Of a stretch of 64,000 bases of DNA, positions 1,047 to 50,682 are shown one piece after another. This DNA comes from Macrostomum lignano (Eukaryota): positions 47,303 to 111,302 of the forward strand of contig NIVC01001133.1 in NCBI GenBank assembly GCA_002269645.1, written 5' to 3'. The notes under the pieces were generated by a model. That model was not told the DNA's origin. It did not search any database and was given only the letters and a program-made list of their open reading frames with translations. The translations under genes were made by a program, and so were the position numbers. The first letter of the stretch is position 1. The number at the start of each line of letters is the position of its first letter.

Positions 1047-4000
1047 AATCAGGTAATCCAAATCCGCCGTATCCTTGAGCTCGTCCAATCCGACTTTGAC
1101 CATCAGGGCGAACAAGTTGAGCAGCAGGTCACTTCGCTGTCGAATAGCCATGTAGGCCCTGACGCACAGGTCTCTGAAGTGGGCATCGATATTCACGCTG
1201 CCAGTCAGCCTGCCCAGCTCAGTCAGCGCGTCCAGAAACTCCTGGGCCAGCACGAACGGCACCCGCTCTCGTTTGATGCCCAGCTTTGACTTGAAGTTGC
1301 CAAGAATATGGCCGAAGTCGATGTGGAAGAGGACGCCATTCTTCCTCAGCATAATGTTGCCGCAGTGCCGGTCACCGATGCCCAGAATGTAGGTGGCCAC
1401 CGAGTAGCCGGCCAGGGAGGACATGAACCGGTGCAGAGCTGCCACGAGTTCAGCGTCTGTCCGGTTGTACTTTTTCAGGTAGGCGGTCACGCGGGAGAGG
1501 CTGGGCTCGTCTGCACTATTGATGATCTTTGCCACCGTGTCGGCGTCTTGGACAACCTGACGACAAGGGGGGGGGGGCAGATTGTAAGACAATTGCCAGA
1601 ATTTGTAGCATCTATAATTAATAATAACTTTGGAAAATTTTAAAAATATTCTAACATTTTTGGGTATATCTAACCTTAACCTACGCTACTGTTAGTATTA
1701 TTAGTCTGGTTTACGAAATTTGACACTTCCAGCCATTTGATCGTCCAACCGAAAACGAAACCTAGCTTAAATCATAAACTCGTAAGCTAAACCCTAAACC
1801 CAAAATCATAATACAAAACCTTACCTAAATCTCAAAACTAACCCTAACAAACTAAACCTAAACCCTACTAAAACCTAAGCCCAAATCTAAACTCAAACCC
1901 AAACCTAACCTAAACTAAAAACTAAACCCAAAATCTAAACTAAACCTTAACCCAAATCTAAACCTAAACCCTATCCAAACCTAAACCCAAACATAAACTT
2001 TAACCTAAACCGTAACCTAAACCCCAACTCTAAACCCAAAACCTACACCCGAACTTAAACCGCAACCCTAACCTAAATCATAATAAAGTAGATTATAGAT
2101 AACCAAAATGGAAAGATACCCATACCCGGTAACAACCGTAAGAAATCACGCATATTACTCTCACCTCAATGAAGCCTTTCCTATCGCCGCAGGTGACCAC
2201 CTCGTACAAGTTGAGGCTGATGTCCAACCCACTCTGCTCCCAGACAAAAGACATGAGCCGCAGACAGTGCAGAATCAGCATGTCCTGTCGAAGGTCATCG
2301 CCGCACTTGAAGATCAGGCTGGTGATCCCGGAAGCTGTGTCATCACGGCTCCAGGCCAGCAGCAGGGGTCGCATCTTCGAGTCCAGCACCCGGCAGCGCT
2401 CGAGATCGGGCCGGCACAGCAGGATGTCCGGGTGGGCCGGCGACCACACGTTGCTGAGGGCTTCCAGCTGGGCCTCAACTCCGCTGCGCAGCTGCCGGGT
2501 GGCGTCTTCGATTTTCGAACGGCTGGCCTGGTAAGGCGCGGCACGGATAGTACACTGTCGGGCTTGCATTCCTGACACCCTCTGGTGGCATTCCTGACAC
2601 CCTCTGGTGGCATTCCTGACACCCTTCTGGTGGCATTCCTGACACCCTTCTGGTGGCATTCCTGACACCCTTCTGGTGGCATTCCTGACACCCTTCTGGT
2701 GGCATTCCTGACACCCTCTGGTGGCATTCCTGACACCCTTCTGGTGGCATTCCTGACACCCTCTGGTGGCATTCCTGACACCCTCTGGTGGCATTCCTGA
2801 CACCCTCTGGTGGCATTCCTGACACCCTCTGGTGGCATTCCTGACACCCTCTGGTGGCATTCCTGACACCCTCTGGTGGCATTCCTGACACCCTCTGGTG
2901 GCATTCCTGACACCCTTCTGGTGGCATTTCTGACACCCTCTGGTGGTATTCCTGACACCCTCTGGTGGTATTCCTGACACCCTCTGGTGGTATTCCTGAC
3001 ACCCTTCTGGTGGCATTCCTGACACCCTCTGGTGGCATTCCTGACACCCTCTGGTGGCATTCCTGACACCCTCTGGTGGTATTTCTGACATCCTCTAGTA
3101 GCATTTCTGACAACCCTCTCTAGTGGCATTCCTGACAATCCTCTCTGGTGGAATTCCTGACACCCTCTGGTGGCATTCCTGACACCCCTCTCTGATGGCA
3201 TTCCTGACATCCCTCTCTGATGGAATTCCTGACAACCCTCTCTGATGGAATTCCTAACATCCCTCTCTGATGGCATTCCTGACAACCCTCTCTGATGGAA
3301 TTCCTGACACCCCTCTCTGATGGAATTCCTGACAACCCTCTCTGATGGAATTCCTGACATCCCTCTCTGATGGCATTCCTAACCGCCCTCTCTGATGGAA
3401 TTCCTGACAACCCTCTCTGATGGAATTCCTGACAGCCCTCTCTGATGGCATTCCTGACAGCCCTCTCTGATGGAATTCCTGACAACCCTCTCTGATGGAA
3501 TTCCTGACATCCCTCTGATGGAATTCCTGACATCCCTTTCTGATAGAATTCCTGACATCCCTCTCTGATGGAATTCCTGACACCCCTCTCTGATGGAATT
3601 CCTGACACCCCTCTCTGATGGAATTCCTGACACCCCTCTCTGATGGAATTCCTGACACCCCTCTCTGATGGAATTCCTGACAACCCTCTCTGATGGCATT
3701 CTTGACACCCCTCTCTGATGGCATTCCTAACCGCCCTCTCTGATGGAATTCCTGACAAGCCTCCAGTAGCATTCCTAACATCCAGCCCTGCTATATTTGA
3801 AGTCATTAAAGAACAGAAATTAATCTAATTAAGTACCTTAGAAGCCAGTCCGCTCAGCCGCACAGCCAGTCCAATCTGATTGCCCAGGTACTCCAACAGG
3901 CTTGAAGGAGAGAACAGCAGAAACGCTTCTAGGAAGATTCCCAACCTATGCTGACTGCTGTCGCAAGCGAGCATCTCAGCTTTCACCAGATAGTACAGGT

Positions 4001-48758: not shown

Positions 48759-50682
48759 TCATTTAGCGATATCAACGCCGTTGGAGTTGGCCAACCAGCT
48801 GTCCTTGCTTAGTTCGACATTTTTCCAATTGTCCAGAAGCAGAGCAGACAATGGCTGCTGCTGCTGTTGCGGCTTTTGCTCCTTCTGCTCCTGCGACAAA
48901 GTCGGCTGACTAACAATCATCGATTGCAGCTTCTGCTTCAACTCGGACTCCGGTTGAATTTGAGAAGCCGGCTTTGGCGCCTGAAACATTGGCAGCGGCA
49001 GTTGCAGCAGTTGCTGCTGCTGGTGGTTCAACTGCTGCTTGGATTTCGGCTGGCACCGATTCAGCCAGCGATCGTTGCTGCCCTCCAGCTCTTGGCGAAT
49101 CTTCGCTTCGCTGGATTCCTCGTCGGCCAGGCCCTGGAAGCAGCCGCCGTCGCACAGACAGTCAGAGCGGCTCTGGCACGGCTCGTTCGCTTTGCACACG
49201 TAGTTTATCAGCCAGCGGGTCTTGTCCTCGTCTATGGAGCCGGCGCTCAGGACCTGCAGTGCGGCATGGTGAGAAGGATGGCCATAAACTCATTTCAGAC
49301 AGACAGACAGACAGACAGACAGACAGACCTCAAAGCTGTCAGCCAGTGAGGCGGCAGCATTGACAGCAGTGCCGCTGCCAGAGCCGCCAAGGCTGCTGCC
49401 GCTGCTGCTGCCGCAGCCACTGGCAGACCCGAGCTTCAGCGGAGTACGCGGCAGTCGAACCAGATAGGATCCCTGCTGCTGCTGCTGCTCCTGTTGAAGC
49501 ATCATCAGGCGGCTCTGTCCGCCGCCTCCGCCGCCGCCAGACGCCAGACTCTTGTGCTCCCAGCCTTCGTCCTCTTTATCGTCGTATTCCTCAACCGGCC
49601 CAGGCAGCGACGGCGTGGCGCTGCTGAAACTCGACGGCGACTGAGCATAGCCGCACACGATCCGGCCGTACTGGCTGATGGACTCGTGCATCGCGGCGCT
49701 CTCGGCTGTGAATGAGATCAGGGGCGGCTCGGCTGGCATCAGAGGCAGCTGGAGAGTCTGCTGAGATGTCAGAGTCTTCTGCAGGCAGCGCTCCTGACGC
49801 CGGAGCTGGTCAACCTGGTTGAGGGGGGGGGGGGGTTTCAATGGCAAATCAATATAAGTTATAGGAGCTAGGTTAAAACGGCCCTTTTTAGGACAGAGCT
49901 GCTCACTGTATAAACGTTAATTAACATCTTCCAATGCTTTGCTCCCCACCCCACCTTGTAATTCGTTGTGGAAAGCAATAATTTTTGTTTCAGGGAGCTA
50001 AAATGACTGCCTGTGGCGCTAAAATGAGTGCCTTGGGCGCTAGAATGAGTGCCTTGGGCGCTAAAATGAGTGCCTTGGGCGCTAAAATGAGTGCCTGTGG
50101 CGCTAAAATGAGTGCCTTGGGCGCTAAAATGACTGCCTGTGGCGCTAAAATGAGTGCCTGTGGCGCTAAAATGACTGCCTGTGGCGCTAAAATGAGTGCC
50201 TGTGGCGCTAAAATGAGTGCCTGTGGCGCTAAAATGAGTGCCTTGGGTGCTAAAATGAGCGCTGACTACATCGATTCTGAGAATAATGTACATGTAGGAA
50301 TTTAGTCATGTACATCTACATGCAGAATTGTTGGCGCTTTGTCCCCTCCCCCACCATAAAATCCATGGCGACGCCCCTGGGCCGTACACTCCTGTGTGAG
50401 TGGTGCCTGTGCATATGACTGGATACGTATCTACACTATCTACTATGAATGGGCAATAATGCCACTCGCCAGTTGTGTGACACTGTGACTCACCTGATCG
50501 GCCTGAACTAGCTCAACCTGCTGCACAAGCCACTGCTCCCTACTGCGCATGGCAGCAATCTGCTTAGCAACACTGTCCCTGATGGAGGCTTTCACAGCTT
50601 CAGCATTGTCTTCAAGAGATTTCCGACAGCTAGTGAGGTGAGACATGGCCTGGTATAGGCGGGTTCGCTCAGAGTCAACCAT
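48759..50682 (-). CDS. NCOA4: Nuclear receptor coactivator 4 (NCOA4/ARA70)-like; ferritinophagy receptor homolog
   Basis: Exons 50682-50494, 49814-49329, 49253-48759 give ~389 aa. The N-terminal coiled coil AMRSREQWLVQQVELV resembles human LRSREVWLYEQVDLI. The motif VCKANEPCQSRSDCLCDGGC resembles human [20 protein letters not shown]. Human sequences are from memory. Confidence 0.8.
49296..49328. repeat. (AGAC)n microsatellite starting at the donor of NCOA4 intron 2
   Basis: Eight units; the GT donor is the first dinucleotide of (GTCT)n on the sense strand. Confidence 0.95.
49996..50379. mobile_element. MITE-derived 21-bp minisatellite (GCTAAAATGAGTGCCTGTGGC) followed by a MITE right end, NCOA4 intron 1
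   Basis: About 13 units matching the internal repeats of the 36983 MITE. The end GTCCCCTCCCC..AAATCCATGGCGACGCCCCTG (to 50379) matches that MITE's right end. No left TIR found. Confidence 0.78.
50383..50432. repeat. Family A fragment, inverted, NCOA4 intron 1
   Basis: The reverse complement GATACGTATCCAGTCATATGCACAGGCACCACTCACACAGGAGTG matches 31912-31958. Confidence 0.75.

What the first reader, a model, noticed from the sequence alone, without database searches (positions are those of the whole stretch)
1047..50682. Six conserved genes head-to-tail on one strand: candidate SL-trans-spliced polycistron
Seen: NCOA4, NCKAP1, PKN, RRP12, TBC1D19 and PI3K are all on the minus strand. Stop-to-ATG spacers are 4.8, 2.4, 1.8, 1.3 and 1.4 kb, and about 0.65-1.8 kb after removing repeats. 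Chance co-orientation is (1/2)^5, about 0.03. Acceptor-like sites sit just ahead of some ATGs: TTTTCTTACTTAG 16 nt before PKN (AG at 30199-30198) and GGTCTTACCAG 23 nt before NCKAP1 (AG at 43957-43956). Known: flatworms use spliced-leader trans-splicing and have operons. Inference: this is an unusually long operon. The AG sites alone are weak evidence.
Basis: partly seen in the sequence, partly recalled or inferred. Interest (0 to 1): 0.7.

Follow-up and report, generated by a model that had tools for sequence, protein, structure and literature searches.

The report
Six same-strand flatworm genes, operon unproven
Six conserved genes of the flatworm Macrostomum lignano do lie head-to-tail on one strand, but nothing in the sequence shows they form one operon; only the RRP12-to-TBC junction looks operon-like, and such operons are already catalogued for this genome.

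Summary
The window is the last 64 kb of Macrostomum lignano Mlig_3_7 contig NIVC01001133.1. NCOA4-like, NCKAP1, PKN, RRP12, a TBC RabGAP and a class-I PI3K all sit on the minus strand. The spacers are 4826, 2399, 1790, 1259 and 1434 nt, or 1730, 1641, 1729, 605 and 1116 nt after removing repeats.

The interpretation cannot be settled from sequence, and the evidence leans against one six-gene polycistron.
- About 1,000 co-oriented runs of six or more genes are expected by chance in a genome of about 71,000 genes.
- The spacers are close to the genome's mean intergenic length of about 3 kb.
- Acceptor-like AG sites near the ATGs occur at chance density.
- Three of the five spacers exceed the published M. 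lignano operon rule (repeat-adjusted distance under 1 kb) unless the UTRs are long.

Only RRP12→TBC has operon-like anatomy. The sole AATAAA lies 60 nt upstream of a strong polypyrimidine-AG, 116 nt before the ATG. A TATA-like box at the same place is an equal rival. TBC→PI3K is borderline.

Repeat-inflated operons of 2-9 genes, mapped with SL reads, are already published for this assembly. If true, the finding is a member of a known, catalogued class. Public SL-read and poly(A) tracks would decide it.

The parts
48759..50682 (-). NCOA4-like gene (389 aa, 3 exons), first gene of the run
   Evidence: NCBI gene call. Weak ARA70 Pfam hit. Cys-motif match to PDB NCOA4 chain 9l93_C, E = 0.0026.
43933..48758 (-). 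Spacer S1, 4826 nt, GC 38%. About 3.0 kb is minisatellite (arrays 44119-44646, 45246-46875, 47764-48012, 48037-48572). 1730 nt remain after repeat removal.
   Evidence: The paralogous copies have S1 of 3875 and 3843 nt.
32581..43932 (-). NCKAP1/Hem gene, 8 exons, 1139 aa (PAA71856.1, BOX15_Mlig007036g1)
   Evidence: Exact spliced reconstruction.
43956..43957 (-). Acceptor-like AG (GGTCTTACCAG) 23 nt before the NCKAP1 ATG
   Evidence: Polypyrimidine fraction 0.53. Sites this good have a 45% chance within any 30 nt of these spacers.
30182..32580 (-). Spacer S2, 2399 nt, GC 36%, no tandem arrays. It holds dispersed repeat copies at 30392-30652, 31873-32083 and 32132-32417. 1641 nt remain.
20431..30181 (-). 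PKN gene (HR1 repeats, kinase, C-terminal FADFDY hydrophobic motif). Introns are filled with minisatellites.
30198..30199 (-). Acceptor-like AG (TTTTCTTACTTAG) 16 nt before the PKN ATG
   Evidence: Polypyrimidine fraction 0.73. About 11% chance within 30 nt.
18641..20430 (-). Spacer S3, 1790 nt, GC 30%, essentially repeat-free (1729 nt unique). AATAAA hexamers 145, 392, 444 and 1680 nt after the PKN stop.
12492..18640 (-). RRP12 gene (N-terminus MKVSRSARK...[13 protein letters not shown]; RRP12_HEAT domain)
11233..12491 (-). Spacer S4, 1259 nt. A 28-nt minisatellite occupies 11792-12396. 605 nt remain. This is the only spacer clearly under the published 1-kb rule.
11411..11416 (-). The only AATAAA in S4. 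Candidate RRP12 poly(A) signal, 184 nt before the TBC ATG.
11349..11350 (-). Strong acceptor-like site TTTGTTTTGTTTTGTAG, 116 nt before the TBC ATG and 60 nt downstream of the AATAAA. Candidate SL acceptor.
   Evidence: Polypyrimidine fraction 0.80.
11341..11348 (-). TATATAAT directly after that AG. Rival reading: TATA box of an independent TBC promoter.
   Evidence: Read from the sequence. Not tested for significance; the region is AT-rich.
9275..11232 (-). TBC-domain RabGAP gene. Two-exon model of 529 aa; the TBC1D19 assignment is not verified.
7841..9274 (-). Spacer S5, 1434 nt. SINE-like element at 8875-9165. 1116 nt remain. AATAAA at 8614-8609, 774 nt before the PI3K ATG.
1047..7840 (-). 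Class-I PI3K catalytic subunit gene (p85-binding, C2, PIK and kinase domains). The last visible exon ends at a GTGAGT donor (1046-1041), so the gene runs past the window start.

Best explanation
This is an ordinary gene-dense stretch of the Macrostomum lignano genome. Six conserved housekeeping-type genes lie on the same strand by chance, and minisatellites and SINE-like elements have swollen the introns and intergenic DNA.

The most likely organisation is several transcription units, not one. NCOA4-like, NCKAP1 and PKN would each be driven from the AT-rich unique DNA upstream of them. Any of the six mRNAs may receive the spliced leader individually; from published figures the prior is about 45% for a conserved gene.

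RRP12->TBC RabGAP is the one junction likely to be co-transcribed, possibly continuing into PI3K. In that reading the RRP12 mRNA is cleaved and polyadenylated after the AATAAA at 11416-11411, and the SL is added at the AG at 11350-11349.

Shown: gene identities, order, strand, spacer lengths and repeat content, and the positions of the signals. Inferred: everything about transcription.
For: - Species and contig identity: one search gives 100% identity over 31,352 bp to NIVC01001133.1.
- Published rules for this genome (PMC8629364): operons are defined by same strand, SL on the downstream gene, and a repeat-adjusted transcript distance under 1 kb (mode about 100 bp). 75% of operons have 2 genes, 18% have 3, and the maximum is 9.
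- Repeat-adjusted CDS-to-CDS spacers are 1730, 1641, 1729, 605 and 1116 nt. Only S4 is clearly inside the rule, and S5 is borderline.
- Distance from the first poly(A) hexamer after each stop to the next ATG: about 4.8 kb raw (about 1.7 kb after repeats) for S1, 1.8 kb for S2, 1.6 kb for S3, 0.18 kb for S4 and 0.77 kb for S5.
- S4 has AATAAA, then 60 nt of U/GU-rich sequence, then a strong polypyrimidine-AG. S. mansoni operon junctions have a median intercistronic distance of 99 bp.
- Mean intergenic distance in this genome is about 3 kb: 764 Mb, 72,846 genes of 7.5 kb, or 85,734 genes totalling 526 Mb. The spacers here are therefore ordinary.
- Acceptor-like AG sites near the ATGs occur at background density.
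- No ORF of 50 aa or more that looks like a gene, on either strand, interrupts the spacers.
Against: - No RNA data were reachable, so independent promoters are as unproven as the operon.
- M. lignano 3' UTRs can be long and interrupted by repeats. The published annotation pipeline merged transcript pieces across repetitive gaps of up to 10 kb. True transcript-to-transcript distances in S1-S3 could therefore fall under 1 kb.
- I could detect interspersed repeats only by self-comparison within 64 kb, so the repeat-adjusted lengths are upper bounds.
- Parasitic-flatworm work reports chimeric (polycistronic) models with intergenic distances of several kb.
- All six genes are conserved in human, the class enriched among SL-trans-spliced genes.
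- At S4 the TATATAAT directly after the acceptor fits an independent promoter equally well, so even the sub-operon is uncertain.
Confidence: 0.6

Rival explanations
1. All six genes (and possibly more beyond the window start) are transcribed from one promoter upstream of NCOA4 as a pre-mRNA of about 50 kb or more. Polyadenylation and SL trans-splicing resolve it into six mRNAs. The kb-scale intercistronic regions are operon spacers inflated by repeats.
For: - M. lignano has operons of up to nine genes, and repeats are documented to inflate operon spacers.
- All six genes are conserved, the class enriched for SL trans-splicing.
- No opposite-strand gene or credible ORF interrupts the run.
- About 13 kb of AT-rich and transposon DNA lies upstream of NCOA4, with no other host gene.
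- AG sites exist upstream of every ATG.
- Polycistronic models with multi-kb spacers are reported in other flatworms.
Against: - Three of five repeat-adjusted spacers are 1.6-1.7 kb, against a published mode of about 100 bp and a 1-kb threshold.
- Only about 7% of M. lignano operons have four or more genes.
- About 1,100 chance runs of six or more are expected, against a few dozen operons of that size.
- A precursor of 50 kb or more would match the longest transcriptional unit ever assembled in this species, 51.6 kb.
- The acceptor-like sites are no denser than background.
- S3 is 1.7 kb of unique, repeat-free, AT-rich DNA with an AATAAA only 145 nt after the PKN stop.
Confidence: 0.07
2. There is no operon at all. 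Each of the six genes has its own promoter in the spacer upstream of it. The head-to-tail arrangement is coincidence, and any SL addition is to monocistronic transcripts.
For: - 60% of SL-trans-spliced genes and 85% of all genes in M. lignano are outside operons.
- TATATAAT lies 107-114 nt before the TBC ATG.
- The chance-run arithmetic above also applies.
Against: - The RRP12->TBC junction leaves only about 180 nt between the sole AATAAA and the next ATG. A strong polypyrimidine-AG lies in between, which is tight for an independent promoter and typical of an operon junction.
- Short repeat-adjusted distances between same-strand genes are the signature of the operon mode in the published bimodal distribution.
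Confidence: 0.28

Closest known systems
Macrostomum lignano SL-resolved operons (Ustyantsev and Berezikov 2021, PMC8629364; annotation of Wudarski et al. 2017, PMC5730564)
   Same: Same species and the same assembly (Mlig_3_7). The genes are same-strand, adjacent and conserved. The spacers are swollen by tandem repeats, which those authors subtract. The RRP12->TBC junction falls inside their 1-kb repeat-adjusted rule.
   Different: SL evidence for the downstream genes is not available here. Three of five spacers exceed 1 kb after repeat removal (CDS-to-CDS upper bound). Six genes would lie in the rare tail: 93% of the operons have 2-3 genes.
Caenorhabditis elegans SL2-type operons
   Same: The proposed mechanism is the same: one promoter, 3'-end formation of the upstream mRNA coupled to SL addition about 100 nt downstream. 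S4 shows an AATAAA, U-rich, acceptor layout.
   Different: M. lignano has a single SL with no specialised SL2. C. elegans intercistronic regions are about 100 nt, not 1-5 kb.
Schistosoma mansoni and cestode operons (PMC12582326)
   Same: Flatworm operons resolved by a single type of SL, mostly two genes and at most nine. Median intercistronic distance 99 bp, like the putative S4 junction.
   Different: The thresholds used there are 200-1000 bp. Only rare chimeric models reach several kb.
Kinetoplastid polycistronic transcription units
   Same: Long same-strand gene arrays with kb-scale spacing, each mRNA resolved by SL addition.
   Different: There essentially every gene is trans-spliced and arrays hold tens of genes. 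In M. lignano only about 30% of genes carry the SL and conventional promoters are the rule.

Membership tests
M. lignano operon (operational definition of PMC8629364) | Immediately adjacent genes on the same strand, with no opposite-strand transcript between them | tested here: met
   All six genes are on the minus strand. There is no credible ORF in the spacers on either strand. Non-coding transcripts cannot be excluded.
M. lignano operon (operational definition of PMC8629364) | Downstream gene carries the 35-nt SL (SL-containing reads map to its 5' end) | not testable with these tools
   No RNA-seq data were reachable. The SL track exists at gb.macgenome.org.
M. lignano operon (operational definition of PMC8629364) | Repeat-adjusted transcript-to-transcript distance under 1 kb | tested here: inconclusive
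   CDS-to-CDS upper bounds after repeat removal are 1730, 1641, 1729, 605 and 1116 nt. S4 meets the rule and S5 is borderline. S1-S3 meet it only if the UTRs or undetected repeats take up more than 0.65-0.75 kb.
SL-resolved operon in general | An unpaired 3' splice site just upstream of each downstream coding region | tested here: inconclusive
   AG sites exist before every ATG, but at background density. The published motif [T/C]TNCAG occurs within 130 nt only for NCKAP1 (-126) and PKN (-85), with a 21% chance expectation per gene.
SL-resolved operon in general | A single promoter or TSS, with a precursor RNA spanning the intercistronic regions | not testable with these tools
   This needs CAGE or 5'-library data and long-read or nuclear RNA data.
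SL-resolved operon in general | Poly(A) signal of the upstream gene a short distance (tens to a few hundred nt) before the downstream acceptor | tested here: inconclusive
   Met in form for S4 (AATAAA 60 nt before a strong acceptor). Possible for S3 and S5 only if distal hexamers at -110 and -108 are the ones used. Not met for S1 and S2, where the nearest hexamers are 981 and 736 nt before the ATG.

The most novel reading that the evidence does not exclude
The whole run (NCOA4-like, NCKAP1, PKN, RRP12, TBC RabGAP, PI3K, and perhaps more genes beyond the window start) is one polycistronic unit of 50 kb or more, with 1.3-4.8 kb minisatellite-inflated intercistronic regions. That would place it among the largest operons in any flatworm. 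It would also show that SL-coupled 3'-end processing tolerates kb-scale spacers.
Probability: 0.07. Interest if true: 0.45.

Novelty: already known. Interest (0 to 1): 0.2.

Why it matters
If all six genes were one unit, it would be an extreme example of a phenomenon already described for this species: operons of up to nine genes whose spacers are inflated by repeats. It would be useful mainly for asking how far apart cistrons can drift before an operon breaks.

As it stands, the locus is an ordinary co-oriented gene run. Its practical value is small. It flags RRP12->TBC as a compact junction worth a glance in the existing SL and poly(A) tracks. It also shows that co-orientation plus AG dinucleotides is not a useful operon predictor in this repeat-rich genome.

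Tried and rejected
1. **Homology searches with the PKN first exon and the RRP12 large exon.** I hoped to find the window's own proteins or RNA-derived contigs bearing the SL. The searches returned only a 49% paralogue and nothing, respectively. The paralogue is not on record in the contig index.
2. **Look-up of my spliced 529-aa TBC model.** The official models for RRP12, TBC and PI3K were therefore not seen.
3. **Gene-level SL or operon tables in paper supplements.** None are held.
4. **Footprinting of spacers against the two paralogous copies (L002, L003).** The copies are 95-100% identical throughout S2, so there is no power to see promoters. The shared gene order is a recent duplication, not independent conservation.
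5. **Test of whether the SL's terminal ATG would be in frame with the ORFs** (and manual reading). The result was inconsistent and uninformative. The quoted PKN and NCKAP1 acceptors are out of frame. PI3K has an in-frame AG at -45 that would add an implausible hydrophobic extension.
6. **Search for an SL RNA gene, tRNAs or Rfam families in the window.** None were found.
7. **Reconstruction of the annotated 1055-aa PKN** with five exons and strict GT[AG]AG donors failed. The stop was fixed instead from the C-terminal FADFDY...C* exon.
8. **Opposite-strand genes in the spacers.** Only antisense-of-exon or repeat-derived ORFs were found.
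Full report
**Where the window comes from.** A rough concatenation of the NCKAP1 exons hit 'hypothetical protein BOX15_Mlig007036g1 [Macrostomum lignano]'. The contig that encodes it is NIVC01001133.1 of assembly GCA_002269645.1 (Mlig_3_7), 111,302 bp. It matches window 53932..22581 at 100% over 31,352 bp. The window is therefore the last 64,000 bp of that contig, and window position = record position - 47,302. An 8-exon model read off the window reproduces the 1139-aa protein exactly. 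The organism is a free-living flatworm with one spliced leader. Its trans-splicing and operons have been analysed genome-wide on this very assembly (PMC5730564; PMC8629364).

**Checking the observation.** Every element of the description holds.
- Pfam places a class-I PI3K (p85-binding, C2, PIK, kinase), a TBC RabGAP, RRP12, PKN (HR1, kinase) and NCKAP1 on the minus strand at the stated places.
- The NCOA4 call is weaker but has two concordant supports: a sub-threshold ARA70 hit at the N-terminus, and a match of VCKANEPCQSRSDCLCDGGC to the Cys-rich fragment of human NCOA4 in PDB 9l93 (E = 0.0026).
- 'TBC1D19' specifically was not verified. Only the TBC domain and a TBC1D19-like length of 529 aa were checked.
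- The start codons are at 50682, 43932, 30181, 18640, 11232 and 7840.
- The PKN stop is at 20433-20431, in a small last exon ending ...[11 protein letters not shown].
- The spacers are 4826, 2399, 1790, 1259 and 1434 nt.
- Position 1047 is the last coding base before a GTGAGT donor, so PI3K, and with it the run, continues past the window start.

**What fills the spacers.** Tandem Repeats Finder arrays (score 100 or more) cover 27.7% of the window and 33% of the gene run.
- S1 is about 3.0 kb minisatellite.
- S4 carries a 605-nt array.
- S2 and S5 carry copies of a 260-290-bp dispersed, SINE-like element.
- S3 is 1.7 kb of unique DNA at 30% GC.

After subtracting these, the CDS-to-CDS spacers are 1730, 1641, 1729, 605 and 1116 nt. 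These are upper bounds, because interspersed repeats could be found only by self-comparison within 64 kb. No ORF of 50 aa or more that looks like a gene lies in any spacer on either strand. There is no tRNA, no Rfam family and no SL RNA gene.

With about 71,500 genes and random orientation, about 1/64 of genes start a maximal run of six or more. That is roughly 1,100 runs. The published operon census gives 10,458 genes in operons, of which 75% are pairs, 18% are triplets, and the largest hold nine genes (two cases). Operons of six or more therefore number at most a few dozen. The spacing is not unusually tight either. From 764 Mb and 72,846 genes averaging 7.5 kb, or 85,734 genes totalling 526 Mb, the mean intergenic distance is about 3 kb. 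The spacers here average 2.3 kb from CDS to CDS.

**Splice-acceptor evidence.** In the non-repetitive spacer DNA, a YAG preceded by at least 53% pyrimidines occurs every 50 nt or so. The chance of one within 30 nt of an arbitrary point is 45%. For at least 70% pyrimidines it is 11%. The published trans-acceptor motif [T/C]TNCAG occurs within 130 nt of the ATG only for NCKAP1 (-126) and PKN (-85). Chance expectation is 21% per gene. The Macrostomum SL ends in ATG, so I also checked frame relations between candidate acceptors and the ORFs. They are inconsistent and uninformative.

**Applying the published operon rule.** Ustyantsev and Berezikov call two same-strand neighbours operonic if the downstream one carries the SL and the repeat-adjusted transcript-to-transcript distance is under 1 kb. 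The operon mode is about 100 bp. I cannot see UTRs, so I used poly(A) hexamers as a rough guide.
- **S4:** the only AATAAA (11416-11411) lies 184 nt before the TBC ATG. It is followed by GU/U-rich sequence and, 60 nt later, by the best acceptor-like site in any of the five upstream regions, TTTGTTTTGTTTTGTAG (AG at 11350-11349, polypyrimidine fraction 0.80). This is the anatomy of an operon junction; S. mansoni junctions have a median of 99 bp. However, the bases right after that AG read TATATAAT. That is a consensus-like TATA box about 110 nt before the ATG, so an independent compact promoter fits equally well.
- **S5:** the first AATAAA (8614) leaves about 0.7 kb to the PI3K start, inside the 1-kb rule if PI3K is trans-spliced.
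- **S1, S2, S3:** the first hexamers lie 56, 602 and 145 nt after the stops. That leaves about 1.7 (after repeats), 1.5 and 1.6 kb, outside the rule. This changes only if distal sites are used, or if the 3' UTRs run through repeats, which the annotation pipeline of this genome did have to bridge.

**Paralogous copies.** Two more copies of NCOA4->NCKAP1(->PKN) exist on other contigs of the same assembly, with S1 of 3.84-3.88 kb and S2 of 2.34 kb. They are 95-100% identical to the window across S2, consistent with the known recent duplication in the DV1 line. They add neither independent synteny evidence nor footprinting power.

**Weighing the readings.** I combined four things: the prior of a few dozen large operons against about 1,100 chance runs; the enrichment of trans-splicing among conserved genes (69.9% of SL genes against 36.9% of non-SL genes are conserved, so P(SL | conserved) is about 0.45); the spacer lengths; and the uninformative acceptor sites. 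My estimates are:
- about 0.07 for a single six-gene polycistron;
- about 0.45 that RRP12->TBC is operonic;
- about 0.3 that TBC->PI3K is operonic;
- about 0.12 each for S1-S3.

That gives about 0.6-0.65 for several transcription units with at least one short operon, and about 0.28 for no operon at all. These are judgement-based numbers, not measurements.

**Comparison with what is known, and novelty.** The closest known system is the set of M. lignano operons itself. The kind of object proposed, an SL-resolved operon whose spacers are inflated by repeats, up to nine genes long, has already been described and catalogued on this assembly with per-gene SL-read evidence. It is probably already in that catalogue, or excluded from it by the 1-kb rule.

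**What would decide it.** The decisive data are the SL-read, T-fill poly(A) and transcriptional-unit tracks, and they are public. Inspecting record positions about 48.3-98.0 kb of this contig would settle the matter in minutes.

Noticed in passing
window 1-64000 (e.g. 25116-25877, 26706-28099, 33076-33607, 35602-35896, 37174-37325, 38022-38739, 41176-41812, 49997-50259): Minisatellite arrays cover 27.7% of the window and sit in almost every intron and spacer. Eight unrelated arrays share a 21-nt period. Many have periods divisible by 3, which keeps long spurious ORFs open (for example through 15022-15594 after the RRP12 exon and 21020-22511 after the PKN kinase exon).
   Followed up: partly
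window 30392-30652, 32132-32417, 8875-9165 (same orientation) and 13856-14145 (inverted, in an RRP12 intron): A dispersed SINE-like element of 260-290 bp, 79-93% identical between copies, with a tRNA-like head read on the minus strand. ARAGORN and Rfam do not call it. The three intergenic copies are sense to the genes and the intronic copy is antisense. A second repeat (31873-32083 and 13642-13840) lies next to it in two places, suggesting a composite element of about 500 bp.
   Followed up: partly
window 60874-62331 (-) and 62376-63368 (+): Transposon remnants upstream of the gene run: an LTR-retrotransposon pol fragment (aspartyl protease plus the start of RT), and a Crypton-like piece (DUF3504 plus a weak tyrosine-recombinase/integrase hit plus QRICH1-like). 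No host gene lies in the 13 kb upstream of NCOA4, up to the contig end.
   Followed up: partly
window 56000-58000: A GC-rich block (60% GC) with overlapping ORFs of 100-270 aa on both strands and no Pfam hits. Unidentified, probably a degraded mobile element.
   Followed up: partly
window 1-1046: PI3K is cut by the window. Its last visible exon ends at a GTGAGT donor (1046-1041), and the following intron opens with a 969-bp array of a 24-nt repeat. The C-terminal exon(s), and any further same-strand genes, lie in the 47 kb of the contig before the window.
   Followed up: partly
L002 (NIVC01000305.1) and L003 (NIVC01003483.1): Two further near-identical copies of the NCOA4->NCKAP1(->PKN) segment exist in the assembly, plus a partial fourth NCKAP1 (P0018). 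The spacers differ mainly in minisatellite length. The PKN model is 681 aa in L003 against 1055 aa here, so the public gene models of the copies are inconsistent.
   Followed up: partly
window 11341-11350: The strongest acceptor-like AG upstream of the TBC gene is immediately followed by TATATAAT. The same 10 bases can therefore be read either as a trans-splice site or as a TATA box.
   Followed up: no
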